DNA of 64,000 bases from Phallusia mammillata. Its lineage: Eukaryota. Positions 7,031 through 62,200 of the stretch are shown piece by piece. The stretch spans positions 1,054,001 through 1,118,000 of the forward strand of contig OZ281494.1 of NCBI GenBank assembly GCA_965637545.1. Reading direction: 5' to 3'. How positions within the stretch are numbered: the first letter of the stretch is position 1; each line of letters starts with the position of its first letter. The translations under genes were made by a program, and so were the position numbers. A model generated the notes under the pieces. That model made no database searches, was not told where the DNA came from, and saw only the letters and a program-made list of their open reading frames with translations.

Positions 7031-7336
7031 GATGCTGTACAGGCGTTTTCGTCCACCAGGTTGCATATTTAACAAAAATGTCGTTCAACTGGTGTAATGG
7101 TAAACAAAAATACTAGTTGTTTCTGACCATAACTTGTATTTTCGCTAACGTTTCGCCCACCAGATCGGTAGGGCTTCATCAGATCGGTAGGGCTTCATGT
7201 TCATCAGTCACTCATTGCTCTGATGAAGCCCTACCGATCTGGTGGGCGAAACGTCAGCGAAAATACAAGTTATGGACAGAAACAACTAGTATTTTTGTGT
7301 AACATTACACCAGTTGAACGACATTTTTGTTAAAAA
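7031..7336. mobile_element. Penelope-like element (PLE) terminal remnant, inverted pair with ~115-bp arms and ~17-bp target duplication
   Basis: Arms ~7068-7182 and ~7219-7334 are reverse complements. AGATGCCGACAAAAAAA is directly repeated at 7013-7029 and 7337-7353. Contains CTGATGA...GAAAC hammerhead core. Confidence 0.75.
7216..7259 (+). ncRNA. Minimal type I hammerhead ribozyme motif (PLE-associated)
   Basis: TGCT-CTGATGA-A-GCCC TACC GATCT GGT GGGC-GAAA-CG-TC/AGCG: full core, stem II, palindromic ACGT stem III, GUC cleavage triplet, 4-bp stem I. Confidence 0.75.
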
Positions 7337-28856: not shown

Positions 28857-31800
28857 TTATGTTGGTATTTCGTAAACATGTCCGTCTTCAATGTTTTCAT
28901 ATTCGTGCTCCACGTCATTCAATTCAATTCAATTCAATTCAATTCTTTTATTTGTCACGCATTAGACGAAAGTACACAATAATAATAGGAAAATTTGCAT
29001 TCTTGCCAGAAGAGGGCGCTGAAACAAAATTTAGTAAAATTACTTGATGAGCTTTTTTCTGTTAGTTCTTTCTTACCTTTCTGATTCACTTGTGGCAACT
29101 TTGTGCGTGTGTATCGTTTCTCACGTGATTTATCACTTGTTGGCCTGTGAGAAACATAATAAGCTCAATTTAAATTCAACTAACTTACTCTCCCTAATCT
29201 TAGTATCAACCTAAGAATTGAAATTGCGACATAGTTTAAAAATGCTTTGAAACAAAATGACAGATGATCACCTCTCAAAATTGATATGTGACAAATACTT
29301 CACTGTTATACAAAAATATTTATCTTAAACTTTAAATAAAAACACTGACCTGTGTCTTCGACGTATAAACATAACCACCAGCCCAACAATGACAAGTACC
29401 AGAAGCAACAGCCCGATCACCAGACCAGCAATCATTCCAACACTCGTTGCAGGATTGGCCGTGTTATCTCCAGGAAAACAGCTTGGAGGGGGATTACCCG
29501 GAGTTGCAACTGTCAGATTGGATGTGATGTTTGTGTTGATTGAACCAGTAACAATGACTGTGAACTATGATATCAAAAGACTTGTTTGCTTGTATTTGTG
29601 TGTGAGCGCACCAAATTATAAGGACTGTTCTTACCACGAATTCATACGAAGTAGAGTGAATGACATCTTTTATTACAGTGGAATTATCATAATACGGGAC
29701 CGAGATGGTTTGGTTTGAACCCTGGACATGAATCTCAACCTGCATGTTGATGTTGGCAAGAAAAGTTTAACGTGGGTTTGTTTGACAACAATAAAACAAC
29801 TTTTATTATCTTCACCTGTGCAATAAGATTGTTATTGCTGATGAATTGATCAAGTCCAATCCAACTGACAAGCACAGTTGAAGGGTTGCATAGAAATATC
29901 TTTGCAGTCGCGTTTACTAAGAAAATCATGGATATGTTAAGACACACAACGATTGACAAAATTATAAACACGTTCGCTTGCCTGGAGGATAGCAACTCGA
30001 TGAAGGGTTTCCATAAGTTGTCACTGTCTTGGATGTTGAAACGTTGGCGTTTATGCAACCAATAAGCATCGCAGTGATCTGTGAATATCGAAGTTGTTTA
30101 AAGTTGTTAAATATGAAGGGTTCCAGTACAAACAAATAGATTTAGATGAAGGAAACCGTTTACGGCATGCTTTTTTTTCTGGTTGAATCATTCGGTAAAT
30201 AAAATGTTTGATTGGTGACCTCTCGAATACAATTCTGCCATCAAGCAACATTAATGTCAATAGCAACTGGATGTCTGTCGTTGATTGTATTTGATTCAAT
30301 TTGATTTGTTCAGTGATTTTTTTGCACTACATACCATGATGGTGTACTCTGTTTCAAAGCTTAGGTTTCCGATGGTTTTGCTTTGATCTGCATACGGTGC
30401 GAAAATTCTCTTGTTTATTTCCACAACATAAATTTCAACCTAAATACTACATTTGTATAAGGACGTAACACCCACATGCCAAAAACTTGATAACAATACC
30501 TTTGCTTCGGGATTGTTATTCTTGATGAATTGATTAAGTCCAGTCCAACTGACAAACACTGTTGAAGCGTTGCATTTGGATTTCTTCACAACAGCCTTGA
30601 CTAAGAGAGGATGTATATGACAACAGAGGAATCACACCACGCGTAATAAATTGCAAGCAACGTCACAACATGCACTGTACGTCATACACTGTACCATTGA
30701 AAAACAAATTATCAAATCGCAAAATAAATAAGAATCATATTCTGTAATTTGTACGCAACTATGTTGTTTGAATAATTAAATACAAAAACGAATCAAAAAT
30801 TTAGAGAAATGTTTTATGAAGTTCTGTCTATCGTTTACCTCACCTAAATAATTTTGTTTTAAAATTACTCACGTTTCACTTGGCAAGCGTAGTAAGCCGG
30901 TTCCCCACTGCTGGTTATGCTTGACTGCTCCCATCCGATTCCATAATGCAACGCGCCCTGGTGGCAAGTTGTAACGTTGGAAACGGGAAAGTTTGCTGGA
31001 GATCCGTCGCTCCAATACCAACCATGCAACGACGTATTGTAATGAGCTCCAATCAGAATGATAATGTCTAGAAATAAATTTGCGAAGGTTATTTGAAAAC
31101 AAAAGTAACAAGATTGACACTTTTTGTGTTTTTGTGTTATTAAAACAAACGCTCACCTGGTGCCAGGAACGATTCGTCATAATTGTTGAAGGTTTTATAC
31201 GATTCGTTGACACTTCGCAACTTGCTACAACGTGGGCTTCTGTCGCCATAGTTAAATATTTCTTTTCGTCGTCTTTTGGTGTTACTTTCGGAAAACATAG
31301 AATACCGAAATCTCCATCCTGCAAACAGTACGATTTATGGTTGCAGGTCAACCTTATGTTAAAAGGTCTTAGTTTGACCACAGTAACAAAGATGAAAGGA
31401 AGAACGTATGAGTTTAAACAAGATGAATAGCGAGATAGTAACGACAAAGTGTAAGATAGTTAAACAGAACAAACGATTTTTATTGGAAACCAGGTTCAAT
31501 TTAACAGGCTAAACATCATTGTGCAATTTTTAATTATTTTTGGTTGTTGCTGAGGCAATATATGCCAAAATGTTTTTGTAAACCTTACAAGCAAATTTAG
31601 GCATCAATACGAACATTTAATGCAAAAGTTTGGCATCTGGAGAAAAATTGTAGCAACAACATTTTTGTTGTGAAACGTTAATAGTTACTAAGCTGAGGGA
31701 AACGCAAACCTTGCACCCCACAGTATCTTCCAATGGTCACATTCCACCTCTCTATGGCACCCCTTGACACGAAAGAACAGAAGTAAATTTCCTGACTGTT

Positions 31801-34746: not shown

Positions 34747-34885
34747 NNNNNNNNNNNNNNNNNNNNNNNNNNNNNNNNNNNNNNNNNNNNNNNNNNNNNN
34801 NNNNNNNNNNNNNNNNNNNNNNNNNNNNNNNNNNNNNNNNNNNNNNNNNNNNNNNNNNNNNNNNNNNNNNNNNNNNNNNNNNNNN
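34747..34885. other. Assembly gap (139 N)
   Basis: Run of N just downstream of the copy-E stop codon. Confidence 1.
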
Positions 34886-40900: not shown

Positions 40901-43081
40901 GTCTGAATAAAGAACAGATATTGCCAAATTAAAATCCCTGACGCAAATCTCGACCTGCATGTTTGTGACATATTTTTCATTTGATAAGAAACAACGACAA
41001 AAATGTATGTTTTACTACCTGAGCTGTTAGATTGTTAATGTTGATGAATTGATCAAGTCCAGTCCAACTGACAAGCACAGTTGAAGCGTTACATAGAAAT
41101 GTCTTTGCAGTCGTGTTTACTATAAACAACGTTGTTAAAGGTGAAGGTAGTAAATGGTTGCTTATGAATGATTGGAATTGAATATACAACATAACACGTT
41201 GGCTTGCACACGTTTAATAAAATATATTTTTTTAGCATATTAGGCCTACTAATTTTAAACGAAACTTGAATCGACAACAGTAATAGAAAAACCACAATCC
41301 AAGCAGCGTAGTGAGCGATTACTGGTTTTGTTGTTTTATAATTACTCACATTTTACTTGACAAGCGTAGTAAGCCACTTCCCTATTGCAGTTTATGCTTG
41401 ACTGCTCCCATCCGATCCCATAATGCAACGCCCCCTGCTGGCAAGTTGTAACGTTGGAAACGGAAAAGTTTGCTTGAGATCCGTCGCCCCAATACCAACC
41501 ATTTAACGACGTGTTGTAACGAGCTCCAATTAGAACATTGATATCTTAAAAATGCTTGTGTTGGTGTACCCAAATCATCATGGTTGTTTTTTGCGTTTCT
41601 TTTAAAATACAATCGCTTACTTGGTGTCAGAAACGATCCTTTGTAAATGTTAAAACTTTCATATGAGCATTAACACTTCGCAATTTATACGAATTTATGC
41701 CACCGTTGAAGTTAAATATTTCTTTTTGGCGTTTCCTCTTGGTAGTGTCGGAAAACAAAGAAAACTGTAATGTCCATCCTGCAAATATCACATATTGTAA
41801 CAAATGTGTCTGTTGTTGCTGACTAAATGAAACAGCTAAAACTATTAATTTGCAATGGGCTTCTTTGCGATATCTAAAGTAACTGATTTGTTTCAACACA
41901 CACCGTTCCAATTTCCATCAAGATCCAGCCCTTCACATGTTGTCCCAATGTCTACTCTCCACTTGTAATTCGGTTCTGTCCAAGCATCGCAGAAATAAAT
42001 GGATTCCATCGTATTTTTGACATTACTGTTGGACAAAAGTGGTTGTGTTAATTTTGACAAACAAATTTGAAACATTATTTGTCGTCAAATAATCTGATAA
42101 AGTTTTTAACCTTTCATACAAATCGAAATACCACAGATGTCCAAGAGATTTTGTACTTTTCCAAGGATACACTTGAGTCAAATTATACGAGTATTTGTAT
42201 CGCCTATTTTCGTCTTCGTAAAAAATATAAACCCGCTGTAAATCTGAAACAAATATTTATTTAATATATTAAAAATTACAATTAAAATTGTTTTTTTATT
42301 TATGAAAAGCCACCACAAACCTGTTGTGTATTTGTCCGTCATGAGTTTAGTGAGAGTTGTGTTGATCTGTGGGTCATCAGTCATTGCAAGATTTCCACCC
42401 AGCAAAGAACATTTCTCCTGTGCAGTGTTTGCATCCACAAGATCGTCAGATAATATCAACACACTGTCCTTCACTGCCTCCATTGTGTTATTGTAAGCTA
42501 AAAATTCATTTCGCGGTTAGAACTTAATTTACATTTTTCCTAAGTAATGATTATGTTCTTTGTAATCCAGAGTGATTACGCTCTGAAGCAAAAACACAAA
42601 CAATATTTATGGTTTTTACTGTTATTAAGCAGGACGAACGTGACTTTGAACAACATTAACATGGTCCATCCCAAACTGTAATTCGAAAGCAAGATACTTC
42701 AGATGCTTTTGTATTTGTTTCATGACCAAAATGCGTAACGTTTGTTTCGTGAGCAAAACGATTCTTTGTCGACCAAGTTAAATGTCCGATGTCTCTTTTC
42801 ATAACTTGCTTTTCTTTAGTTTGTTTAGAGCTCAAACAAGGCTCGGTTACGAAACTACCGTACGATGATTTATAACAAGGATGATTTTAACAGATGTAAC
42901 CAGCTGAACTTATTATTAAAACACTATTTTTGTACAGTAAAAAACTTCAAAAAACCTTTATTTCATGTATTTTTAAAACAACGCTAATAGGCTACTTACT
43001 GTTTGCTTGTCCCATCGAATACTGAATAAAAGTTAAAACCAAAAATGTCCTCACGTCATTACTCTTTATGGCTGAGAGCAT
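34923..43081 (-). pseudogene. Copy E: receptor PTP pseudogene, SP-CTLDx2-FN3x2-TM-D1-D2
   Basis: All exons are present, but there is a 1-nt deletion in exon 5 (stop at 41627-41629), CAG>TAG in D1 (37294-37296), a net -4-nt frameshift in the D1-D2 linker exon (stop at 36403-36405), and a transposon immediately upstream of the ATG. Confidence 0.85.
40290..40415 (-). mobile_element. Possible tRNA-derived SINE fragment in an FN3 intron of copy E
   Basis: GC-richer insert. The minus strand starts with B-box-like GTTCGAATC followed by the hairpin GGCTAGATTTTTCTAGCC. No A box seen. Confidence 0.3.
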
Positions 43082-43083
43082 TT

Positions 43084-45427
43084 CTGCCGTCTTTTGGAAA
43101 AACCTAGTAAGCGACATATTTTTCAAAATGCGTTTTTTTAGTGGAATGGTTACTTAATGTTGGCTAGTTTTCTGTGTTAAAATTTGGAATTTGAAAGATA
43201 TATAGTTATTGATATATTTACGGTTAAAAAACCCTAGTAAGTGAAACACAACGCTAAAAGTATTTGGCAAAACCTAGTATTGCTGTTTGACCAATCATGA
43301 CGGTCGAGTTCGTCACGTGACAACTTTTTTCTGACAGCTGCGTGTTGTCGCCTTGTTTACATATCTATTGGCGTTGTGATTTAGTTTTGTTTGCTATTAA
43401 GTAAATACCGGTATTTTAAGTTTGTTTAGCTGTAACTATACCATCCAGTTTCAGTGTTTGTTTAATATGGCTACCACAAGAGGAAAACTAATCTTGGCCC
43501 TTCAAAGAAAAACAAAGAATGAAGCTCCAGTTTCCAGGTAGTTTGGATTAAGAAACTTGCTTGCCAGGTTACACTTCTGAAGGCATTAAGGTAGAAATTT
43601 AAGTTGAGATGAGAAACACATTGTTAATGTCCAAGAGAATAAAAGTTTGAAATATTATAGTTCATGTAAGTACACTTTGATTTCAGCATCATAGCCATAA
43701 GCAAAAAATAACACATAGATTTGGCTCAGAATCAGACTCAGAAACAGGTTATTGTGCTGAAATTAAAACCGCAAGTGTGGATGATATTAATCATAACGTG
43801 AGTAGTTGTTGTCATTTGTAGTCTTATCTGACATGACTACTGAGCATCATTTAACTCATCAAATGATCAGGATTCAAAACTATTTCAGCTCCAAAATGAC
43901 AGTTCTTGGTTAGGAAGAATTGTGCCACTGGACCAAGATTCAGATAGTTTAACCAAAGAAAATCCATATGTTATAATTTCATCTAAGCTTGAAAGTTTAC
44001 ATGCTGAACCTATTAAAGGTATTTTTCTTTCACGCTTGAAACCTTGCATGATGTTAATTTATGTTGTTAAAGGTTAATGATGATTTTTAGCTTATAAAAT
44101 ATAAATGTTCACAAACAAATAAACATAATTGTTTAAGTTTGCTCATCTCAAAGTTAACCATTCCAATGTTTTATTAATATTGATAAGTTTTCATGTCTAA
44201 AAATATTATAAAAACTGCTGGTCGCAGGACTTTGCTGGAAGAAGGAAATATATGAAGGGCACTATTCATAAAACTGCAATGTTGGAGCAAAGATATCCTG
44301 CTGCTGTCTGAACTGCCTGGTTGCTGTGGTGCCAAGCTCACAGTTTGCAAAGTGTTTTATATAAACAAATTTGGGAATAAAAACTGATTGTTTATAACTG
44401 AACATACGAAATGGTGCAAATCTGGATTGATAGTGTATTTTTCCTCTCTTTTTGACTAGTTTTGTAAATATATGACAATTTAACAATGAAAAAAGAATAT
44501 TGACAAAACCTTTTTAAGGCAAACAAGCCTTTTTTCCAAAATTACTGAAAGCTGCATGGAGCTTTATTCTTTTTTTTCTTTCTTTAAAAGGTCCAAGATT
44601 AACTTTCCTTGTGTGGTAGCCATATTAAACAAACAATGAAACTAGATTTTGTAGTTTAACAAACTATATTTACCAGTTTTGCGACAACATGCTGTTGTAA
44701 GAAAAAATGACATGTGTTTAGTAAATCTGTAAATAAAACATACATAAAGAAGCTACCTTTCTAGATGTTATATGTTTTTATTTGTTATGTAAAAGCATCT
44801 TTTTGGGTGCCAATCAATTGATGGTTAAACTGCTTGATGTTTTCATGTTAGACTTTTGTAGCATGGTAAGTTAACCACATCAAGAACTCACAAAAGTTTA
44901 TGACATGTTTTGTAAAAGTATCTTTGCCATGTGCTTGTGATGTTGTTGAACAAATATACTTTTTATTGGTCCTCAGCACTAGCATGTTGCTATTGCTAAT
45001 AAAAGGTTTTTGACTGAACATTTGTACTCCAGCATTCTTCAAACAGCTTGAAAATTGGTGACTTAAATGTAATAACACAGTTTATGAAAAAAATAAAAAG
45101 CTTCTGTTTGATTTGTGAAGGTGATAAAGCAAAAAAAATCCATCTATTGTTCTGAGCCTAGACTTTTCCAAATTATATTTTAGTTAGTTTTGCATTTCTT
45201 ATCCGGTAAAACCTAGTATATCGTTTTTTCATGGATAATAAACAAACTAACAATATGTCGTGAACTGTAGGTATGGCAAAAAATTTTTACTGTAACATGT
45301 TTGTGAAAAACACCAAACAGGTAGACAAAAAAAATATTTTTGGATGCTAACCAACATCAAACGCGTTTTGTGCTTTTTCTCGAAAACTTGAAAATTGCAG
45401 TTACTAGGTTTTACCAAACGACGGCAG
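43084..45427. mobile_element. Non-autonomous DNA transposon, Sola1-like (27-bp TIRs, ATTT TSD)
   Basis: CTGCCGTCTTTTGGAAAAACCTAGTAA (43084-43110) versus TTACTAGGTTTTACCAAACGACGGCAG (45401-45427), 2 mismatches. ATTT at 43080-43083 and 45428-45431 (AWWT is the Sola1 TSD). AAAACCTAGTA subterminal repeats. Confidence 0.75.
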
Positions 45428-46951
45428 ATTTTATTCAATTTTCTGGTAAACAAGATGTTTGAAAAACAACTTTGCGTAAATCCAAACAAACATCGTTTTA
45501 CGACAGATGACAAGTATTTATTTCTTTTAGAAGAATAGGTTATTCCTAAAATCGCCTGAAATCTTTTTCACCTTCCAATAGTCTTACTTAGCTGTCCCCA
45601 TACACTGCACATATGCAAGTTTGCTACGCCTAATTAGCAATGCCTTGTTGCTTTGCCTCTGATTCATCGTCTACATAGCAGTTTCCTGTGCCTAGTTGAA
45701 ATCATCTAGTTGCGTTGCACAAGCGCTGCGTGGAAAACATGACATAATGCTGCCTTTATATCCAAACATTTATCAATCATTAACTTCGAAATGAATTTAT
45801 TACTTATGCTGTAAAACTGCATTGTTAAGCACAGTTTAGTGTATACTGGTGAAGACATCACAACCAAACAAGTGAACTTCGTATTTCCTACGTATTTCGG
45901 TGCAGCAACATCGCATAGTGTGCTTTATGACAAGCTTACTTTTATAGTCTGTAGGTTGCGCAACTATGTCCTGCTTGGTATTTTTTTTTCTGTAAAACTG
46001 TTCTTCCACCTTTTTTACCAACAGAAATAATGCAAACTAAACTCAATCTACTAATCCCACTATCCCACAATCTACTACTCCAAGTCGAGTTTCACTAAAT
46101 TCTCTCCTATGCAAGATTCCGTCATATAACTCATTGTAACGACGATGTTGCTTAAACAAATCCTGAATTTTATCAACTACCCTTAGTTTATCTCTTCCCA
46201 ATACGTCATCTCTCTTATTAATACGTCTGTTGTCCAGATCTGCGGTTACAGGTGTTAAAATGATTTTATGTGTGACAAAATCGATTAGACAAAGCCGTTT
46301 ATTTGCTCACAAAATGAAAGTGATTACAAAACAATTCTTACCATCTGCGGTGTCTTCTAACAAACTAGTTAAAAATATCAGAAAATTGAAAGTGACAGTG
46401 ATTATAAGACTCGGCCGCTCATCATATAAACCGATTTGATATAATAATGATACATAGGATCAAACACAGAAGGAAACATCAATGTGATTACATCTTTTTC
46501 ATGTTTTTTGTTTATAATTTGAGAGAGTGGCGACTTTTGAAAAGACTTGTTGTAAATTTATACGAGACTTTACTTAGATACAAACAACGATCAGTATTTA
46601 TATATTTGTAAGCAATTGATCGACACTCTGGCGTGGAGAATTATATATCAACCTTTACTTTCGCAAATGTGCAAATGTTATACCTTTGGCATCCAGCAAA
46701 GCAAACACAATCATAATTTTAAGCAATTCATTTCGCTTCATTTCTCTTGAAACTTTACGACCTTTTTTGGCTGCACTTGTAAAATAAATTGCGTTATATA
46801 CGAGTTTCTTTTACCGGTGACATTTTATAATTGCGTTAAAGCAGAGTCTAATTACAAAAATCTTAGGTTACGTTTGTAAGCGCGTTAAACCTGCAATTCT
46901 TATGAAAAATAAAGAAAATAAAAACTACAAGTGGGTACAGCCGATGACTAG

Positions 46952-49900
46952 TTATGTTATTGTTTCGTATGTAGGGTTTTCATTTGTTGATTTATAATTT
47001 TCGTATTCATGTTGATCTGTAGTTTTGTCGTCAGAGTTTGCTGCAAAACAGATGGTAAATCCCATTGTTAACAGTTTAAAGGTTTTAACTCATAGAATAA
47101 GTTATTGGATGTGTAATGTGCTGGGTTCAAACTTTGTACGATAAACTTGAGTCATTGCAGTAGAAATATTCCTTACCTTCATTGCTCTGATGCGGAAACT
47201 GTTCCTTAGTCGCTTGTTTTCCAGATGCTTTCTTATTTGAAGTTCTGTGGAAAGAAATTTTGCTTATTATGTTGCTCTGTGGGAAAAACGAGTGTTTGGA
47301 ATTGAAATTAAGTTGGGACAGCAATCGGACCTAGAGTTTGTGGTTCTAATCTCTAACTGTTTCGAGTTTAAACAAAGTAAACAAATTGCTCAGCTGGTGG
47401 AACAAAGGTAATTAAAACAGCTGCGATTGCAGGCACCTGCGTCTTCGGCGAATAAACATAACTATTAGCCCAACAGTGACAAGAAGCAGAAGCAAGAGGC
47501 CGATCGCCAAACCAGCAATCATTCCAACACTCGTTGCAGGTAAACCGCACGAAAGGGCATTACTTAAAGTGGTTACTGTCAGATTGGATGTGATGTTTGT
47601 GTTGATTGAACCAGTGACAATCACTGTGACCTGGAATACAAAGATGTTTTGTTGTTGTAAGTGATAAACTATAATGGCATGTGTCAAAAACCGATGGATT
47701 ATAATTCTACAAAAAGTTACTTACAACAATATGGTATGAAATAGAAAGCTGGAGATCTTGTATTATTGTCGTGTTATCTGAATACGGGACGGAGGTAGTT
47801 TTATTCAAACTCATGACAACAATCTGAACCTGCAGCAAGGTATAAGTTTGTTTCAACAATTTATGTTTGTCGACTAGAAATCAAACCAAAAGCAACACAC
47901 AATATATTTTGTACCCGTGCTGTTAAATTGTTGTTGTAGATGAGTTGGTCAAGTCCAGTCCAACGAACAAGCACAGTTGAAACGTTGCATGGAAATGTCT
48001 CCGCAGTCGCGTTTACTGCAAAAATCGTTGTTAAGGTTTGGACACGGTAAATGTTTCCCAACTCTTGGAATTTAATATACCACACAGCACGTAGAACGCT
48101 TGCTTACCTGGTGGATAGCAACTTGATGGGGGGTTTCCATAAGTTGTTACTGTTTTCGATGTTGAGACGTTAGTGTTCAAGCATCCGGTAAGCATTGTAG
48201 TGATCTGAAACGTTAAAGCTGTATCACTTAAATTATGCCTTCAATTGAAGCATTTAAAATTAATAATCAAGGTCTGGACTTTTAATTTTTTAATTTTTTT
48301 ATAGGCACTGATATGATGCTCTAACATGACAAATAATTTGTACTGCTACTATACATTGCTTACGGTAATGTAGTAATTAGTTGCTAAACTTAGGTTTTCG
48401 ATGGTTGTCGACAGAATAGCATATGGTGCAATGAATTTTCTGTTCATTTCCAAGACATAAATTTCAACCTAAACGAAACATTTGTTAAAATCAAGAAGTT
48501 AACGGACGTATATAAACTGTATGTCACTTCTGCATAAAGTTTGTTGTTGCGGATGAATTGATCAAGTCCAGTCCAACTGACCAACACAGTTGAAGCGTTG
48601 CATGGAGTTGTATCCATAGTCGCTTTAACTAGAAACAAGTTTAAATTAAATATTCATGAAAAGCATATTGTCTAGCGACACGATATAAAAGTATGTGCAA
48701 ACATATTTGCAAAAAGATCATTGGAACACAAAGTAATGTCAAGAAGACATTTACTTGTTTTTGCTGACTGATTTACTTGAAATTACTCACATTTCACTTG
48801 ACAAGCGTAGTAAGCCGATTCACCACTGCAGTTCATGCTTGACTGCTCCCATCCGATCCCATAATGCAACGCTCCCTGTTGACAAGTTGTAACGTTGGAA
48901 ACGGGAAAGTTTGCCGGAGATCCATCGCTCCAAAACCAACCATGCAACGAAGTGTTGTAACCAGCTCCAATTAAAACGTTAACGTCTGTAAAAGAAATAG
49001 CAAATACTATTTATGCACAACGTTAGGTTTTGCCTGTCTGGTAACAAAATGTTGTTGGGCACTCACTTTCCGCCAAGAACGATCCCTCATATATGGTGAA
49101 GTTTTGAAACGTTTCGTTGACACTTCGTAACTTGCTTGAACGTTTTGGTTTTCCGCTTCTATAGTTAAATACTTTTTTTCGGGTTTTTCTGGTGTTAGTG
49201 TCGGAAAACAAGAAAAACTGTAATGTCCATTCTGTAAACAAACATAAATTAATCAAATAACAATAAATGAGCCTGAGAACTTTTTCATTGACATGGTAAT
49301 AGAGTAAAAATCAAGGTGTAAAACATGGCAGTTACGTTTTGTATTGAGTTTTTGTTCTTTGTGAATGGCTGTATATACAAACCCACTTTTTACGTACCAG
49401 TTTGTTATTTTGGTTTTAAACAAAAAAATGTTACACACAAATTTTGGGTTATTTTTTCATACACACATTTTTTTAAATATAATTGATATGTTTGACATCT
49501 GCCTTATATAACGGTCAACTAAGTTACTAAGTTTATTCACACTAACGGTTCCAATTTCCATTGGGCGCGAGGCCACTGCAATTTCTTCCAATAGTGACAT
49601 TCCACCGCTCATTGACAGTGTTTGTCCCATAGTCGCAAAAATAAATTGGTTGACTTTGGTTTTTAGGATTGCTGTTAAAAAAATAAAGTAAATATATGTA
49701 TATCTATTTACATATGTATGGTTACGATTTCCCTGGTTGCTGTTAAATGTGTTTACCTGATTAGCAGATCGAAATACCACAGATGTCCGAGAGATATTGT
49801 ACTTTTCCATAAATCCTCTTCAGCCGAATTGTTTGAGTATTTGTATCGTTCATGTTTGTCTTCGTAAAAGATATAAACCCGGTGCAAATCTGAGAAGTTT

Positions 49901-50343
49901 TTTTTTGCAATGGAGTTAAACATGAGCATTTTTCAACATAGGGTAACTACTCATTTACAGCTATTCACGGTTTTTAGTGCCGTTGAAGTATATCTGTCTG
50001 CTCACAAACGGAATAAACGTAAGTACAAACCTGTCTTATATTTGTCTGTCATGAGTTGAGTGAGAGTTGTGTTGATCTGTGGGTCATCAGTCATTGCAAG
50101 ATTTCCACCCAGCAAACAACATTTCTCCTGTGCAGTGTTTGCATCCACAAGATCGTCAGATAATATCAAGACACTGTCCTTCACGGCGTTCAGTGTCTTT
50201 GTGCAACCTGTCAATAAGTTTTACATGTTTTCTTTGTATTTCTTTTCAAAATATAGTTGGTTTCGATGGAACTTACTGTTGTGTTGCGTGAGTGAGCAGT
50301 GAACAAGAAACAACAACACCACAACCTTGTGACCAGAGATCAT
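46952..50343 (-). CDS. Copy F: PTP-less receptor, SP-CTLDx2-FN3x2-TM-short dual-tyrosine tail (apparently intact)
   Basis: SP 50277-50343 MISGHKVVVLLFLVHCSLTQHN. All checked CTLD and FN3 exons are open. TM exon 47437-47630. Exon 47177-47244 RTSNKKASGKQATKEQFPHQSNE. Terminal exon 46952-47040 ANSDDKTTDQHEYENYKSTNENPTYETIT*. Confidence 0.85.
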
Positions 50344-50712
50344 GACTAACATTGACAGACCAAAATATCAATAAATGACTTTTAGGTTTTAAATTAAGCA
50401 ATCTATTCTTCAATCATAAAGCTTTTTGTTAGGCACACTTTGATTATAATTTTACAAATAAATACAAATTAAAAAAGTTTAAACGCTGTCTTGCTTCTGA
50501 ACTTGAAACACTGAAAAGCGTTGCTCAATTTGCACTGACAGAAGAAACGAAAGTCCTTGTGTTTCTTAAGAATCGTCCGACACTTGGGTGTTTACCAACT
50601 CGTTAAAGCGCTTTTATGTTTTACTGCAAACATTGGCACCTTCACCTTTATTGAAGTCTTAAAGCATTGTCAAGTCAAGTGATTTTTTGGCATAGGCACT
50701 TTATGATAACAG

Positions 50713-50874
50713 TGTAGCGCTGTTTATTTGCGCGAGTTCAAATATCGAATGACACAAGACAGAAAGGGCGAGACAAAACACGTTGCAAATAGAAAAAGGC
50801 ACGTGACGTATTGTGCGGTTCGGTTACGCATGACTGGTTAACGCAGTTGGGGAAAACACCCAGTTGTCGCCACA
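50713..50874 (-). repeat. 3' LTR
   Basis: Direct repeat of 54668-54829. Confidence 0.97.
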
Positions 50875-53800
50875 CAGCCCCCCCCCAGAATCGTACAATG
50901 CGCGACAATAATGATTGCAATGGTTGACGTCTGGTCGCATTCTCGCGAAGGCATTGCATGCGTTTTTCTTCGGGGGCCGTCCTCTTCTTGGAGGTTGTGC
51001 AACCTGAACAGGCATAGTTAAATGGACCTGTGCTGGTTTGAGTCTGTCAACCGAAACGGTTTGTGGTCGCCCACCCAAATCCACTATGAAAGACTTTGCG
51101 CCGGTCTCAATGACTTTGTAGGGACCCTCATATGGCGGCGTTAATGGCGGACGATGGGAATCTTTTCTGATAAACACAAACTTTGTTGTTGACAAATTAG
51201 CTGGAATAGCTGACTTTTTAAGACCATGGCGGGACATACGGATCGGAGCCTGCTTTAAAATGGTGTCTTCTAGAGTAGGGAGAAGTGTTGCTAAATCCGA
51301 CGAAGGATTCTTCAGTGGAACGATGTCTCCCGGTATCCGTATCGGCGCACCATATACAAGCTGAGCGGACGATGCTTGTAAATCTTCTTTAGGTATGGTT
51401 CTAATTCCTAGAAGTACCCATGGTAACTCATCAAGCCAATTTGAACTGCTCATACGGGCCATGAGAGCACTTTTTAAGTGTCTATGAAATCGTTCCACGA
51501 GGCCGTTTGCTTGCGCGTGGAAAGCCGTGGTTTTATGAAGCTTAATGCCTAAAAGCTGATTCATCATTGACCACAGTTCTGAAGTAAATTGCGCCCCACG
51601 ATCTGAAGAAATATCTGCTGGAATGCCAAATCGGGCAATCCAGTTGCTAATGAAGGCTCTAGCACATGTCATTGTCGTTTGATCCTTCATCGGTATGGCT
51701 TCTGGCCATCGAGTAACACGGTCGACAATTGTAAGGAGATAGGTATATCCTTGTGATTGCGGCAGCGGTCCTACTATATCTATATTCAAGTGACTGAAAC
51801 GTGTCGCTGTGGGTGGATATTCAGCCAATGGAGCGCGAATGTGTTGCTGAATTTTCGCCCTTTGACACGACAAGCATTGCTTTGCCCATGTACTAACATC
51901 TCTTCGCATTCCATGCCACACAAACTTTGATGCAACTAAGTTGCTTGTGGCCCGTATGGAGGGGTGTGACAGTCCGTGGATTGCATGAAAAACGCGTTTT
52001 CGCCAAGCTTGAGGAACTAATGGTCGAGGATTCCTGCCAGAAATATCACAGAGAATAATAGTTTCTTCGTGGTCGTAAGCAATATCTTTGAACTTCAGCT
52101 TAGTAATAGAGGTGCGGTAAGCTTGCATCTCGTCATGAGCTTCTTGTTGGGCTGCAGCCAATAACTTGTAATCAAAATTAACACAGTCAGAAACACTTGC
52201 GAGCAAGGACCTGGAGAGTGCATCAGCAACAGGATTGTTTTTACCATCGATATGTTTAATATCAGTGGTAAACTCTGAAACGTATGAAAGGTGTCGTTGC
52301 TGACGTGCTGACCACGGATCTGTAGCTTTATTAATGGCAAATGTGAGTGGTTTATGGTCCGTGTACGCTGTGAAAGATCTTCCTTCCAAAAAATATTTAA
52401 AATGGCGGACAGCCAAATACAATGCCAACAGCTCGCGGTCAAAGGTGCTGTACTTAAGCTCAGCTGGCCGTAGGCATTTGCTAAAAAACGCCAAAGGTCT
52501 CCATTGACTGTCGATTTGCTGCTCCAAAACTGCGCCAACAGCAAACTGGGAAGCGTCCACAGTTAAAGCGGTTTTTGCCTCGAGCCCTGGGTGGTTAAGT
52601 AGCGTAGCATTTGCAAGTGCGTCTTTAGCTTCATCAAAAGCGGTCTGAAGGCTTTCTGTCCACGTTAAATCCTTTGGCTTATTAGACAGAGCTTGTATAT
52701 GGGTAACATTATGGTAGCAGCTGATGGTATGAATCGATGATAAAAATTTATCATACCACTAAATTGCTGTAAACCTGCAATTGTTGTTGGGCGTTTGAAT
52801 CTTCGTATTGCCTCCACTTTTTCCGGCAAGGGCTTGGCCCCATGGACATTAACTTGATGTCCAAGAAAATCAATTTGTGTCTGCCCGAACCTGCACTTCG
52901 CAGTGTTAATAATAAGACCATGGCTGTCTAATCTTTTGAACAGTTGTCGCAGATGGTCAATATGCTCACTTGAAGTTTTGCTTGCCACAAGAATATCGTC
53001 AAGATAAACAAAAGCAAAAGGTAAATTTGTGCAAACGGAATCCATTAAACGCTGGAAAGCTTGTGCTGCGTTTTTTAATCCAAATGGCATACGCAAGAAT
53101 TCGAACAAACCGAATGGGGTAATTACAGCAGTCTTTGGTACATCAACTGGCGCAACAGGCACTTGGTGATAACCACGAACCAAGTCTATTTTTGAAAAAA
53201 TTGTGGCACCTGTTAAATGCGCAGAAAAGTCCTGGATGTGGGGAATAGAATATCGATCCGCTTCAGTGATCGCGTTCAAACGCCTGTAGTCACCACAGGG
53301 CCTCCAACCGCCGGATGCTTTGGGCACCATGTGTAAAGGCGATGACCAGGGACTCGAAGAACGCCGCACGATTCCTAGGTCAAGCAAATGTTGAAATTCC
53401 TGTTTGGCAATCTTCAATTTTTCAGGGGGCAGACGCCTTGCCCTAGCATGGACTGGTGGCCCATGTGTGATAATAAAGTGCTCTACCTGATGCTTGGGTT
53501 GTGAGTCAGAAAAGCTACTTTTGGTCAGATTGGGGAATTCTGAAAGTAGTTTGGTGTAAGTTGGTTGTGCTGCAAAAGACATTATGTCACGCGGTGAATT
53601 CGCTGTCTTAGAAGAATTCACATTATCTGCAGAATTCGGATGCCACAGTCGATGGCGCTTGAAGTCGACAAGCAACCCATTTGCATGCAAAAAATCGATG
53701 CCCAGCAGAGGCCGAGATACATCGGCTATTACAAATTTCCAAGCAAATCTACCAATGGAAAGATGTAAAGTTAAAACTTTGAAGCCGTACGTACGTATAA

Positions 53801-53996
53801 TAGTTCCATTGGCTGCTTTAAGTGAAACACCAGGTCTGTTTGAGCGACGATCCCGTCCAGTTGCAGGTAGCACACTTACTTCAGCACCACTGTCGATTAA
53901 GAAGTTGGCTCCTGTGTTGCAGTCTGACACGAAAAAGAGTCGGTTTTGCCTGCCGGCCGTCGCAGCCAATCTGGGCGGCCGGCTGGCTCGTTTCCC
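50824..53996 (-). pseudogene. pol: Gypsy Pol (PR-RT-RNaseH-IN), broken by a 1-nt deletion near 52695
   Basis: [26 protein letters not shown]. RNase H DASQFAVG. IN HGLSH...C..CQR, DIVGPL, SDRG, ERFH. The frame switches at TAC AA|GCT CTG TCT AAT AAG between the 464-aa and 578-aa ORFs. Confidence 0.93.
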
Positions 53997-54631
53997 TGAC
54001 AAATACATGGTCGGCGGCAACGACGTGCCTTGGGCCCAAAGCGCTGATGAAAAAAACAAAGGCCGTCTCCACGTGGATCAAAAGCAGACTTGTTGCTTTG
54101 ACTCTGCACTTTTGAAACAATAAAATTTGGGTCGCGCCTTGCTTGCCATAAAACATCTGCTCTCTTGGCGAAACTTCGAAGGTCGTCGATGTTCTCTTTT
54201 GCCAAAATAATTCTGATGTCTTCAGGCATTTGTTGTAAAAATAGATGCTCAAAAAGGAAACACGGCTTGTGATCGCCTAACAAAGCCAGCATTTCATCCA
54301 TTAGGGCTGAAGGTTTTCGGTCTCCTATCAAATCATTTATCAAATCAGGCAAATTTAAAAGACGAGCGGCTCTCTCTTGCTTTGAAAGAGAATATGTGTC
54401 CAACAGTTGCTGCTTAAGCGCTTCATATTTTCCTTCTGCAGGCGGATGTTCCAACAAATCAATTAGACGTAGTGCTGCGGTTTGATCCAATGCAGAAACC
54501 ACATAATAAAACTTTGTTTTGTCGTCAATTATCTTCCGCAAAGCAAACTGTGCTTCTGCTTGATTAAACCAAACACGCGGTTGCGCGGTCCAAAATGTCG
54601 GCAACTTTAAAGACACTGCATGCTCTTCCAT
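53897..54631 (-). CDS. gag: Gypsy Gag
   Basis: SLKLPTFW...WFNQAEAQF...TKFYYVV and [18 protein letters not shown] (CHCC). Confidence 0.95.
53990..53996 (-). promoter_or_regulatory. -1 ribosomal frameshift slippery heptamer G GGA AAC at the gag/pol overlap
   Basis: Gag reads CAG GGA AAC GAG while Pol reads TCA GGG AAA CGA (-1 frame). A GC-rich stretch follows. Confidence 0.8.
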
Positions 54632-54667
54632 CCTGAGAAATTCGTTCTCAGGTTACGGGGTCACCAC

Positions 54668-54829
54668 TGTAGCGCTGTTTATTTGCGCGAGTTCAAATAT
54701 CGAATGACACAAGACAGAAAGGGCGAGACAAAACACGTTGCAAATAGAAAATAGCACGTGACGTATTGTGCGGTTCGGTTACGCATGACTGGTTAACGCA
54801 GTTGGGGAAAACACCCAGTTGTCGCCACA
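54668..54829 (-). repeat. 5' LTR
   Basis: Direct repeat of 50713-50874, followed on the minus strand by the PBS. Confidence 0.97.
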
Positions 54830-59200: not shown

Positions 59201-62200
59201 AAACACGCTGACCGTTTTTCAAAATACAATATGCGAAAAACAGTTTTTCACCAAGCTTATTGGATGTCCTGTGGACCACCAAAAAGTCTTCATGAACCTC
59301 TAGTGGCCCAAGGAACACCAGTTAAGAAACACTGCTTTAGACAACAAATAACTCGTTTTCTATTCACTCCTTGGGAGAAATGATTTGGCCAATCAAAGAG
59401 TAGTTGCCACAAAAAAAACTCAACTCTTCCTTTTTCCACTAAGCCAGTGAGCATGACGATGATGTTGGAGTTTTTCTGCCAAACCATCAACCAGAAATCG
59501 TTGATTGTCTCCTTCTTCGGACCCTGAGTGGCGATGAACTTCCTCTCGTTATCGTAACCCGGTATATAAGCGGCGTTGATGTAATCGTTTCCACCGCTTC
59601 CTTGCAAAACTACTCGGGCATGATCGTCTATTGAATAAACGCCATTAATACTGAGATTTTATCACACGTGCAGAAGTGTTACAACAAATATCCACTGTAG
59701 CCAATAGTGTAATATTTACCTAATACTAGTAAAATAGCAAAACCAACTATCTTAATAAAAATAATAAAAATAAAACAATACTGAGGATTTGAATTATGTT
59801 ATGTGGCGGAAACAAATGTGCAACAACTATGCCAGTAATAAATCAAGGGATTTACAACACAACAAAGTGACTTTTCCCGAAACTTTGATGAATAGGAAAA
59901 ATCAACCGTTTAATACTCACAAGGAAAAATATTCTTATAGCGGTTTCTCACAGCATTTTGTGGCAATTGTGACACGTCCCTTGTTCTCTGGTTGTTTTTG
60001 CTTTGGTTTTCGACTTCCTGAAAAATGGTTAATACGGAGTTTTTAAGGTTTGGTTGTTTTCTTCTCGAATTGCTTGGACGTAAATGTTTATTATAACTTA
60101 GTTTTCTCTAACCTTAAATTCGTTGACAAATAGAAGTCCTGACTCAACATTTTTCTTGAACACCTCATACAATTTGGTGACTCTGCAGTTTTTTGAGGGG
60201 ACAACAGAAGGAGATAGGTTTTCGTATATCACGGGTCCTGTTAAAACCATGATGTATATTTCAGCATGGCTCTATGGTATTGTTTTCATCAATTTTGTGA
60301 AACTCTATTAGTTAATTAGCAATTTTCGATAGTAAAAGTTACCTGCGGGTGACATTTGCGATGAAAATTCCACATGTGAAGGCGGATCTTTATTATTTCT
60401 GCAAAAACAGAACAGCTTTGAGTTAAACGTTTTTAGTTGGTCATGTTTCTATTTAATTGTACGTGAGTGTTTAATCTTTGCTTTAATAAAAAAAACAAGT
60501 TTGAATATTTATTCGTGATCTAAATTTCAGTCGGTGGTAAAAATCTGGTTACCGGGCATCATGAGCAGAAGATTTTGTCCAAAATGTTTTGATCAAAAAT
60601 ATCAAAAATATATTTATGTTTTGTGAGCCAAATCAGTTAGTGACAAACCTGTTTCGACGTTTAATCATAACCACCAGCACAGCAATGACAAGTACCAGAA
60701 GCAACAGTCCGATCACCAGACCAGCAATCATTCCAACACTACTCGCAGGATTTGTTCCAGGATAACAGTTTGGAGGTGGATTTCCCAGAGTTGTTACTGT
60801 CAGATTGGATGTGATGTTTGTGTTGATTGAACCAGTGACTATGGATGTAATCTTTGATACAAAAATATACTTTCAGTTTAATTTTCAACAAAACGATTTT
60901 TAAGATTTTTTTCCTTTTATTTTTGCTTGGTCAAATATGAAAGAGAACAAGTCCTTACCAATATTTCATACAAAGTAGAGTGAAGGAGATCTTCTATCAT
61001 AGTTGATTTATTGCAATAAGGAACAGAGATTGTTTGATTCAAACCCTGGCTTTCAATTTCAACCTGTATGTAATTTGGATGCAATGATGAATATAGTTTT
61101 TTTTTCAGCAAAATTGTCACACTTTCAGGTTCGTTTATCAAACAATGAAGACTCAAAAAACAACAACAAAGAGTTTCCAATAGACCTGCGCTAACAGATC
61201 GTTGTTGATGAGAAATTGATCAAGTCCAGTCCACCTGACAAGCACATTTGAAGCGTTGCATGGAAATGTCTCTGCAGTCGAGTTTACTGGAATAAAAAAT
61301 TTACTGTTTCTGTTTTACAAAACTTGCAGTAATTCAACAAATATTGCAGGCGTTTTAAATATCGTGTTTGTTAATCACTTGTCTGCATTTCATATGTCTG
61401 TTTAATTTTACGAAAAATGTTACCTTCAGGATAGCAGCTTTGCGGGGGATTACCCGGAGTTGTTACTGTCACATTAGATGTGATGTTTGTGTTGATTGAT
61501 CCAGTGACAATTACTGTGACCTGAAAGACATCAAACACGTAACTAGTCTTGTAGGTTTCACCTTAAATGTGTTAAATCAACTCTCAATGGAAAAAAATTC
61601 ACCTGAATCTCGTACAACGTTGAGTGACTGAGATCTTCTATTAAGGCCGAATCGCTAAAGTACGGAACTGAAGTTGATTGGTTTAAACCCTCGATGTTTA
61701 TCTCAACCTGCATGTAGTTTGGTTACAAATATTTGTTTGAGAAACACACAAACTTGCTGTCAACCTGCGCCACGAGCTCGTTGTTGTTGATGAATTGATC
61801 AAGTCCAGTCCAACTGACAAGCACAGTTGAAGCGTTGCATGGAAATGTCACTGCAGTCGTAATTACTGCAATACATAATAATAAGCCACTGATTATGGAT
61901 TGCAAAGTTAGAGAAACACTTTGCCTGTTTCTTACGAATTGGGGTCGCTAAATACTTAAAAAATTGCATCAGTGTTTACCTTCAGGGTAACAACTTGAAG
62001 GGGGATTACCCGGTGTTGTTACTGTTGCATTGGATGTGATGTTTGTGTTGATTGAACCAGTAACAATCACTATGACCTGAAATCACAAACATACCTTTTG
62101 TTTATGTACATGTTACGTTCCGGTTTCCGGAAAAGTTTATTAACGTTATTTTTCTGCTAAAACAGTGATTACTCAATTAACAAAAACACAGGCGACAGGC

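What the first reader, a model, noticed from the sequence alone, without database searches (positions are those of the whole stretch)
46952..47437. Copy F ends in an intact short ITAM-like tail (HEYENY-x8-YETIT*) instead of a phosphatase
Clean splice path: TM exon, phase 2, 47177-47244, phase 1, 46952-47040, TAA. The tail is YENY-KSTNENPT-YETI. The 8-residue spacing and second half fit the ITAM consensus (YxxL/I-x6-8-YxxL/I), but the first half does not. YEN fits the Grb2-SH2 pYxN motif. The TM has no charged residue, so any signalling would be intrinsic. The ORF track misses this exon.
Basis: partly seen in the sequence, partly recalled or inferred. Interest (0 to 1): 0.8.

Follow-up and report, generated by a model that had tools for sequence, protein, structure and literature searches.

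The report
Phosphatase-less receptor copy with docking-tyrosine tail
One sea-squirt receptor gene in a row of lectin-like tyrosine-phosphatase receptors has lost the phosphatase and appears to end in a short tail that keeps the family's conserved Y-x-N docking tyrosine; this is a Grb2-type motif rather than a true ITAM, and use of the tail exons in RNA has not yet been seen.

Summary
On the minus strand, the TM exon (47630-47437), a 68-nt exon (47244-47177) and an 89-nt exon (47040-46952, TAA) join through GT-AG sites in phases 2 and 1. The product ends ...HEYENY-x8-YETIT*. Copy F as a whole is an intact 14-exon, 576-codon gene.

RNA-like contigs from four runs of one study confirm 9 of its 13 splice junctions. 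None of them covers the TM exon or the two tail exons, so use of the tail is still inferred.

The ITAM reading is not supported. The first half-site fails (YENY), and the +3 residue is not conserved in relatives. What is conserved is Y-x-N:
- The four phosphatase-bearing paralogues carry VIYENL, VTYENL, SVYQNV or DAYQNV at the start of the matching juxtamembrane exon.
- Copy D has HEYENI.
- A Clavelina lepadiformis homologue of the same build, annotated by two pipelines, ends ...IYEN-x7-YQNTY-x-K*.

The tail is therefore best read as the family's juxtamembrane segment cut short after a Grb2-type (pYxNx, "ITT-like") site. In copy F it also has a C-terminal NPTY/YETI.

The scan has already noted this receptor family several times elsewhere in this genome. 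Interest is moderate.

The parts
50277..50352 (-). Copy F exon 1: ATG and signal peptide
   Evidence: Gene model. The junction to exon 2 is seen in RNA-like contigs (joint 50205/50275, cut +2).
48791..50207 (-). Copy F exons 2-6 (50207-50031, 49889-49757, 49671-49547, 49231-49067, 48985-48791): lectin-like head
   Evidence: All four internal junctions are seen in spliced contigs. Exons 2 and 6 are 76-91% identical in protein to the paralogues. dN/dS is 0.17-0.6. The CTLD assignment is weak: W-x-W-x-DG...C...C pattern, KLRG1 E 0.058 and CLEC9A E 0.58, and no Pfam hit.
47725..48628 (-). Copy F exons 7-11 (48628-48528, 48468-48364, 48204-48108, 48015-47915, 47829-47725): two FN3-like cassettes with linker
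   Evidence: Junctions 6|7, 7|8, 9|10 and 10|11 are seen in contigs. Junction 8|9 is not. Paralogous exons are listed.
47437..47630 (-). Copy F exon 12: stalk, uncharged TM helix (47528-47451), RRRR stop-transfer; donor in phase 2
   Evidence: The donor position is conserved in all six TM exons of the window. No RNA contig covers it. 31-mers at 47572-47618 are shared with 4-6 paralogous exons.
47177..47244 (-). Copy F exon 13 (68 nt, phase 2 to 1): first juxtamembrane exon
   Evidence: Copy D has an exon of the same length and phases (29144-29077). The PTP copies have 56-65-nt exons with the same phases and a shared P-x-Q/H-V/S-N patch. No RNA evidence.
46952..47040 (-). Copy F exon 14 (89 nt, phase 1, TAA): YENY 47005-46994, NPTY 46978-46967, YETI 46969-46958
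   Evidence: The Y-x-N matches the start of the second juxtamembrane exon of the PTP copies and the tails of copy D and Clavelina. No RNA evidence.
28857..29144 (-). Comparator, copy D tail: 68-nt exon 29144-29077; last exon from 29018 meets a stop; HEYENIEDGHVYEIPT* (28928-28857) is out of frame
60215..60232 (-). Comparator: VIYENL at the start of the second juxtamembrane exon of a PTP copy. Equivalents: VTYENL 23106-23089, SVYQNV 12599-12582, DAYQNV 39106-39089
   Evidence: A PTP domain is confirmed in the paralogue exon 11309-11049 (Pfam Y_phosphatase, E 9.6e-27).

Best explanation
Copy F is an intact, transcribed gene for a type I membrane protein. It has a signal peptide, a lectin-like head, two FN3-like cassettes and an uncharged TM helix. 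It belongs to a tandem family in which most members continue into tyrosine-phosphatase domains.

Its cytoplasmic part is a 56-residue, very hydrophilic tail made from the same two juxtamembrane exons that the phosphatase copies have. It stops 24 codons after the family-wide juxtamembrane tyrosine. It is therefore a phosphatase-less paralogue that keeps the docking tyrosine.

Inferred mechanism:
- When the ectodomain is clustered, a Src-type kinase phosphorylates Y in YENY.
- This pYxNx site, as in the 'ITT-like' pYVNY of DNAM-1, recruits a Grb2-type SH2 adaptor.
- The last tyrosine (NPTYETI) gives a second SH2/PTB site or an internalisation signal.
- Because the ectodomain is shared with the phosphatase copies, the two forms could see the same ligand with different outputs.

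Shown here: the gene structure, transcription and splicing of exons 1-11, homology of the tail exons to juxtamembrane exons, and conservation of Y-x-N.

Inferred only: use of exons 12-14 in mRNA, phosphorylation, and adaptor binding.
For: - The 14-exon ORF is intact and every junction is GT-AG.
- 9 of 13 junctions appear in spliced contigs at 99% or higher identity, from four runs of one study.
- The conserved ectodomain exons are under purifying selection.
- The tail exons have a strongly non-random hydrophilic make-up.
- Exon 13 has the same length and phases as in copy D and the same phases as the first juxtamembrane exon of the PTP copies.
- Y-x-N is found at the matching place in all four PTP copies, in copy D, and in the Clavelina short form and PTP form.
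- Two Clavelina alleles differ at three tail residues but keep all three tyrosines and both Asn+2.
- The Clavelina short form is collinear with copy F from signal peptide to TM (26% identity, E 2e-35). It is annotated independently as CAK8679940.1 and XP_076817574.1.
- pYxNx is the Grb2 SH2 consensus, and pYVNY is the working motif of DNAM-1 (PMC4647266).
Against: - No RNA contig covers the TM exon or either tail exon in any of the four runs, although about half of exons 1-11 is covered in each. Depth is only 3-6, and a paralogue-shared 47-nt stretch breaks assembly inside the TM exon. Even so, 292 nt of unique downstream exon sequence is also missing.
- The word-index protein search found no transcript-derived fragment carrying the TM exon.
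- The only other tail copy in the window (D) is broken, and earlier notes say many copies in this genome are broken.
- Tail sequence between copies F and D is barely alignable outside the motifs.
- No canonical AATAAA lies within 600 nt of the stop; the nearest variants are TATAAA at +123 and AGTAAA at +293.
- Phosphorylation and binding are untested.
Confidence: 0.5

Rival explanations
1. The tail is an endocytic or sorting signal. NPTY (NPxY) and YETI (YxxPhi) near the C-terminus would bind PTB-type adaptors or the AP-2 mu subunit. Copy F would then be a lectin-like cargo or clearance receptor rather than a signalling one.
For: Both core motifs are present and overlap on the last tyrosine. 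NPxY occurs in only 0.3% of random ORF ends here. Many lectin-type receptors with short tails are endocytic (general knowledge). Draper/CED-1 uses NPxY for engulfment beside a tyrosine signalling motif (PMC4503800).
Against: Neither motif is conserved. Copy D has HVYEIPT (no NPxY, +3 is Pro), and Clavelina has YQNT and Y-x-K*. The usual aromatic or hydrophobic residue at -5 of NPxY is missing here (N-E-N-P-T-Y).
Confidence: 0.2
2. The tail exons are not used, or the gene is a decaying truncated duplicate. The mRNA would then end elsewhere, as a secreted form after exon 11 or a tail-less TM form, and the two-tyrosine ending would be a relic of the juxtamembrane exons.
For: No contig lies on 46500-47678 in four runs, while exons 1-11 are covered. 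Copy D's equivalent tail is disrupted. An LTR retroelement sits 358 bp upstream of the ATG. There is no nearby canonical poly(A) signal.
Against: All 14 exons are open with good splice sites. The hydrophilic composition of both tail exons is very unlikely for drifting sequence. The Clavelina homologue keeps a short tyrosine tail as a stand-alone annotated gene. Contigs at depth 3-6 cannot show absence.
Confidence: 0.2
3. The tail works as a degenerate ITAM. The doubly phosphorylated YENY-x8-YETI would recruit a Syk/ZAP-70-type tandem-SH2 kinase.
For: The 8-residue spacer and the second half-site (YETI) fit the consensus. Tunicates have ITAM-pathway components and ITAM-bearing receptors (PMC5465252; PMC12582321).
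Against: The first half-site has Tyr at +3. The alternative register (YKST) also fails. Relatives do not keep L/I at +3 of either tyrosine, and the spacing varies (x5 in D, x6 in Clavelina). The first tyrosine is shared with the phosphatase-bearing paralogues.
Confidence: 0.07

Closest known systems
ITT / ITT-like motif (pYxNx) of DNAM-1 (CD226) and other Grb2-docking sites
   Same: Y-x-N-Y lies in the short cytoplasmic tail of a type I receptor with an uncharged TM. DNAM-1's working site is pYVNY, where Asn+2 is essential and Tyr+3 is dispensable (PMC4647266). Asn+2 is the conserved position here too.
   Different: The ectodomain is unrelated (lectin-like/FN3 against Ig). Here the motif is inherited from the juxtamembrane region of a receptor phosphatase family. 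Phosphorylation and Grb2 binding are untested.
ITAM receptors (for example Halocynthia roretzi A74 with two ITAMs; Draper-I)
   Same: Two tyrosines lie 12 residues apart, the second is YxxI, and the protein is an invertebrate or tunicate membrane protein (PMC5465252; PMC4503800).
   Different: The first half-site is not YxxL/I, and neither the +3 residue nor the spacing is conserved in relatives. By the defining motif it is not an ITAM.
Botryllus FcoR receptors with ITIM, hemITAM and 'core' YxxI/L/V motifs
   Same: This is a tunicate multigene receptor family whose members differ in their tyrosine motifs. YETI fits their 'core-1' YxxI/L/V (PMC12582321).
   Different: FcoR are Ig-superfamily proteins with no phosphatase-bearing paralogues. 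That paper reports that YxNM-type ITT motifs are absent from FcoR.
Clavelina lepadiformis LOC143463089 (XP_076817574.1 / CAK8679940.1), uncharacterised
   Same: The overall architecture and collinear homology are the same (E 2e-35). The tail is short and ends in YEN plus further tyrosines. A PTP-bearing relative (XP_076817985.1) lies on the same chromosome-scale contig.
   Different: Identity is only 26%. There are three small exons after the TM instead of two. Its second site is YQN, not NPTY/YETI. It is a stand-alone gene, not part of a tandem array.
Catalytically truncated receptor isoforms that keep a juxtamembrane docking tyrosine (for example the TrkB-T-Shc isoform; recalled from memory, not checked here)
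   Same: The same ectodomain and TM are kept, the enzyme domain is lost, and the juxtamembrane phosphotyrosine docking site is retained.
   Different: Those arise by alternative splicing of one kinase gene. Here it is a separate paralogous gene of a phosphatase family.

Membership tests
ITAM | Two half-sites, each YxxL/I | tested here: not met
   Only YETI fits. The first is YENY, and the alternative register is YKST.
ITAM | Spacer of 6-8 residues between the half-sites | tested here: met
   The spacer is 8 residues (KSTNENPT). Relatives differ: x5 in copy D, x6 in Clavelina.
ITAM | Binding of the doubly phosphorylated motif to Syk-family tandem SH2 domains | not testable with these tools
   Needs a peptide binding assay.
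hemITAM | Acidic triad followed by x-YxxL | tested here: not met
   No match in the tail. YETI is preceded by NENPT.
ITIM / ITSM | [S/I/V/L]xYxx[I/V/L] or TxYxx[V/I] | tested here: not met
   No match in copy F. The PTP paralogues do match, with VIYENL, VTYENL and SVYQNV.
ITT-like / Grb2 SH2 site (pYxNx) | Tyr with Asn at +2 in the cytoplasmic tail | tested here: met
   YENY lies at 47005-46994. Y-x-N is conserved in copy D, in four PTP copies, and in the Clavelina short and PTP forms.
ITT-like / Grb2 SH2 site (pYxNx) | Phosphorylation by a Src-family kinase and Asn-dependent Grb2 binding | not testable with these tools
   Needs biochemistry.
NPxY PTB / endocytosis signal | NPxY core with an aromatic or hydrophobic residue at -5 | tested here: inconclusive
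   The core NPTY is present, but -5 is Asn. The motif is absent from copy D and Clavelina.
YxxPhi sorting signal | Yxx[LIMFV] accessible in the cytosolic tail | tested here: met
   YETI lies two residues from the C-terminus. It is not conserved: YEIP in copy D.
Lectin-like/FN3 receptor family of ascidians (PTP or short tail) | Collinear homology of the ectodomain and TM with family members | tested here: met
   Exon-by-exon matches to the window paralogues. E 2e-35 to Clavelina P0014 across signal peptide to TM.
Lectin-like/FN3 receptor family of ascidians (PTP or short tail) | Head is a C-type lectin-like domain | tested here: inconclusive
   No Pfam Lectin_C hit for exons or for the Clavelina proteins. 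PDB sequence hits are weak: KLRG1 E 0.058, CLEC9A E 0.58. The AF2 model was too poor to search (pLDDT 49). UniRef names P0014 a C-type lectin domain protein.
Receptor protein tyrosine phosphatase | Cytoplasmic PTP domain | tested here: not met
   tblastx of a paralogue's PTP region finds nothing in 42500-47436. The paralogue exon 11309-11049 scores Y_phosphatase E 9.6e-27.

The most novel reading that the evidence does not exclude
A non-vertebrate chordate runs a paired-receptor system built on one lectin-like ectodomain. Some paralogues carry tandem phosphatase domains. Others, such as copy F, carry only the family's juxtamembrane pYxN docking tyrosine and act as Grb2-coupled activating partners. 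Their docking site could itself be a substrate of the sister phosphatases, which would make an on/off pair evolved independently of the ITAM/ITIM logic.
Probability: 0.12. Interest if true: 0.75.

Novelty: new variant of a known kind. Interest (0 to 1): 0.4.

Why it matters
If the tail is used, copy F is a natural "enzyme-deleted" version of a receptor phosphatase that keeps only a Grb2-type docking tyrosine. It sits beside full-length sisters with nearly the same ectodomain. That offers a simple test, in the closest invertebrate relatives of vertebrates, of how receptor families split into opposing outputs without ITAM/ITIM motifs. It also corrects the ITAM label: the feature worth testing is Y-x-N. 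No paper found here describes the family. Searches returned nothing on lectin-type receptor phosphatases in tunicates.

Tried and rejected
- **Word-index protein search.** A search with the TM-exon ORF found nothing. The window's species seems absent from the protein libraries, so this says little.
- **Search seeded with the Clavelina protein.** Using P0014 as query returned only itself.
- **Metagenome-borne ascidian contigs.** L002-L009, fetched through short CTLD-exon hits, hold family head exons. No TM or tail exon could be recognised by tblastn or by hydrophobicity scans. I dropped this line.
- **DNA alignment of the F and D tails.** It gave only the last 18 nt. Homology therefore rests on exon length, phase and motifs.
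- **Pfam on single exons.** No lectin or FN3 hit.
- **AF2 of the Clavelina head.** Too poor to use (pLDDT 49), so I ran no fold search.
- **Searches not run.** The third large protein search was not spent on the 51-aa tail.
- Each allowed one call, and I spent it on the whole gene. The runs were held only as contigs, so exon usage at 46952-47630 could not be settled.
- **Rejected: hemITAM, ITIM and ITSM readings** of copy F.

Full report
**What is in the sequence.** The window is AT-rich animal DNA. It carries a tandem row of paralogous receptor genes on the minus strand.
- TM-exon copies lie at 60.8k, 47.6k, 39.8k, 29.5k, 23.9k and 13.4k.
- Four of them are followed by several kilobases of exons that are similar between copies. 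These exons include a tyrosine-phosphatase domain (exon 11309-11049, Pfam Y_phosphatase, E 9.6e-27).
tblastx of a paralogue's phosphatase region finds nothing between their TM exons and the next gene.

**The observation.** The splice path is exactly as described.
- The TM exon 47630-47437 ends in phase 2.
- A 68-nt exon, 47244-47177, leaves phase 1.
- An 89-nt exon, 47040-46952, ends in TAA.
- All sites are GT-AG, with pyrimidine-rich acceptors and a near-consensus AAG|gtaagg donor.
- The protein ends HEYENY, eight residues, then YETIT. The TM helix has no charged residue.

**The whole gene.** I built the full model from RNA-supported junctions. It has 14 exons and 576 codons, with no stop or frameshift.
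- Four runs from one study hold contigs at 99% or higher identity to the window. They skip introns with CT..AC ends, so they come from spliced minus-strand RNA.
- They confirm 9 of the 13 junctions, from exon 1|2 to exon 10|11 except 8|9.
- Conserved head exons show dN/dS of 0.17-0.38 (exon 6) and 0.5-0.6 (exon 2, copy F against the other copies).
- Copy F is therefore a live, spliced gene at least through exon 11.

**What is not shown.** No contig lies on 46500-47678 in any of the four runs, so the TM exon and both tail exons lack RNA support.
- Part of this is technical. Depth is 3-6, the contigs are 160-400 nt, and 31-mers at 47572-47618 are shared with four to six paralogous exons, which breaks de Bruijn assemblies.
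- Even so, about 290 nt of unique exon sequence downstream is also missing. I count this as mild evidence against the tail, not as neutral.
- The reads tools allowed one call each, and only contigs were on offer.

**Is the tail coding sequence?** Independent of RNA, three things say yes.
- Each tail exon peptide has at most one hydrophobic residue. This is true of 0.26% and 0.15% of stop-free windows of the same length in this DNA.
- Copy D has a 68-nt exon with the same phases at the same place (29144-29077). Its last exon is disrupted: it meets a stop, and HEYENIEDGHVYEIPT* lies out of frame.
- The phosphatase copies have a first juxtamembrane exon of 56-65 nt with the same phases and a shared P-x-Q/H-V/S-N patch. 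Their next exon, in phase 1, opens with VIYENL (60232-60215), VTYENL (23106-23089), SVYQNV (12599-12582) or DAYQNV (39106-39089) before running into the phosphatase domain.

The two tail exons of copy F are thus the family's two juxtamembrane exons. The second is cut short 24 codons after the conserved tyrosine.

**Relatives elsewhere.** A profile of the most conserved head exon, searched against 1.84 billion representative proteins, found only 17 hits. Two are full-length, and both come from the sea squirt Clavelina lepadiformis.
- One has 1090 aa and two phosphatase domains. Its juxtamembrane segment contains SVYVNT.
- The other has 592 aa and is collinear with copy F from signal peptide to TM (26% identity, E 2e-35). 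After three small exons it ends NAIYEN-x7-YQNTY-x-K*.
- The short form is annotated independently as CAK8679940.1 and XP_076817574.1. The two alleles differ at three tail residues but keep every tyrosine and both Asn+2.
- It is a stand-alone gene between unrelated neighbours.
- No protein of the window's own species is in the libraries.

**Reading the motifs.**
- Copy F's tail matches no ITAM, hemITAM, ITIM or ITSM pattern.
- Across copy F, copy D, Clavelina and the phosphatase copies, the residue at +3 of the first tyrosine is Y, I, C/D, L, V or T. The Y-to-Y distance is 12, 9 or 10.
- The invariant feature is Y-x-N. This is the Grb2 SH2 consensus pYxNx.
- The activating NK receptor DNAM-1 signals through pYVNY. 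There Asn+2 is essential and Tyr+3 is dispensable (PMC4647266).
- Copy F's YENY has the same form.
- The last tyrosine of copy F sits in NPTY overlapping YETI. Neither is conserved in copy D or Clavelina.

**Verdict on mechanism.**
- Most likely (0.5): copy F is a phosphatase-less paralogue whose tail keeps the family's docking tyrosine and works as a Grb2-type (ITT-like) phosphotyrosine site. A copy-specific second tyrosine may add SH2/PTB docking or internalisation.
- Rival (0.2): a purely endocytic tail.
- Rival (0.2): unused or decaying tail exons.
- Rival (0.07): a working degenerate ITAM.

**Context and novelty.**
- Earlier notes of this scan describe the same family (lectin-like/FN3 head with phosphatase or tyrosine tail) in this window, next to it, and on other pieces of this genome. 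Two follow-ups reached a 'docking tail' reading.
- My contributions are the homology of the tail to the juxtamembrane exons of the phosphatase copies, and Y-x-N as the conserved element.
- Literature searches found tunicate receptors with ITAM, ITIM, hemITAM and 'core' tyrosine motifs (PMC5465252, PMC12582321). They found nothing on this family.
- I rate it a new variant of a known kind and of moderate interest. The ITAM headline does not hold, and tail usage is unproven.

Noticed in passing
window 50710-54829 (minus strand): An LTR retroelement with 165-bp LTRs (50710-50874 and 54665-54829, 98% identical). Its ORFs hit reverse transcriptase, RNase H, integrase and DUF7041. The proximal LTR ends 358 bp upstream of the copy F start codon, so it may have displaced or now supply the promoter.
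   Followed up: partly
window 60215-60232, 23089-23106, 12582-12599, 39089-39106 (minus strand): The phosphatase-bearing copies carry VIYENL, VTYENL, SVYQNV or DAYQNV just before the first PTP domain. Three of the four fit the ITIM pattern as well as pYxN. A receptor phosphatase with a conserved juxtamembrane docking tyrosine may be worth its own look.
   Followed up: partly
window 23089-23125 (minus strand): In the 23.9k phosphatase copy, the only AG acceptor before the VTYENL exon leaves the wrong phase relative to the preceding 56-nt exon. This copy may be broken at that junction.
   Followed up: no
window 47535-47560 (minus strand): Copy F's stalk is 6-7 residues shorter than in the other TM exons and has lost their PGNPP-x-C-x-PGDNT patch (TLSNALSCGLPATS against TPGNPPPSCFPGDNTANPATS).
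   Followed up: no
window 20297-20555 / 20696-20952, and 7032-7183: A 259-bp inverted repeat pair (96.5%) lies inside the phosphatase part of one copy. A 152-bp relative (96.7%) lies in another copy. This looks like a small foldback or MITE-like element.
   Followed up: no
window 48552-48583, run X3: One RNA contig matches 32 nt of copy F exon 7 and then continues for 186 nt in sequence not in the stretch. The end reads like a paralogue's ...NNNLSAVVE. It is probably a transcript of another family member, so other copies are expressed too.
   Followed up: no
L008 2180-10378 (ENA metagenome contig k141_7093): Assembled metagenomes hold 12-35 kb contigs of another ascidian with two tandem genes of the same lectin-like family. 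Host DNA in these metagenomes could serve for comparative work.
   Followed up: partly
window 34747-34885: A run of 139 N (assembly gap or masked) lies inside the phosphatase part of the 39.8k copy. I left it untouched.
   Followed up: no
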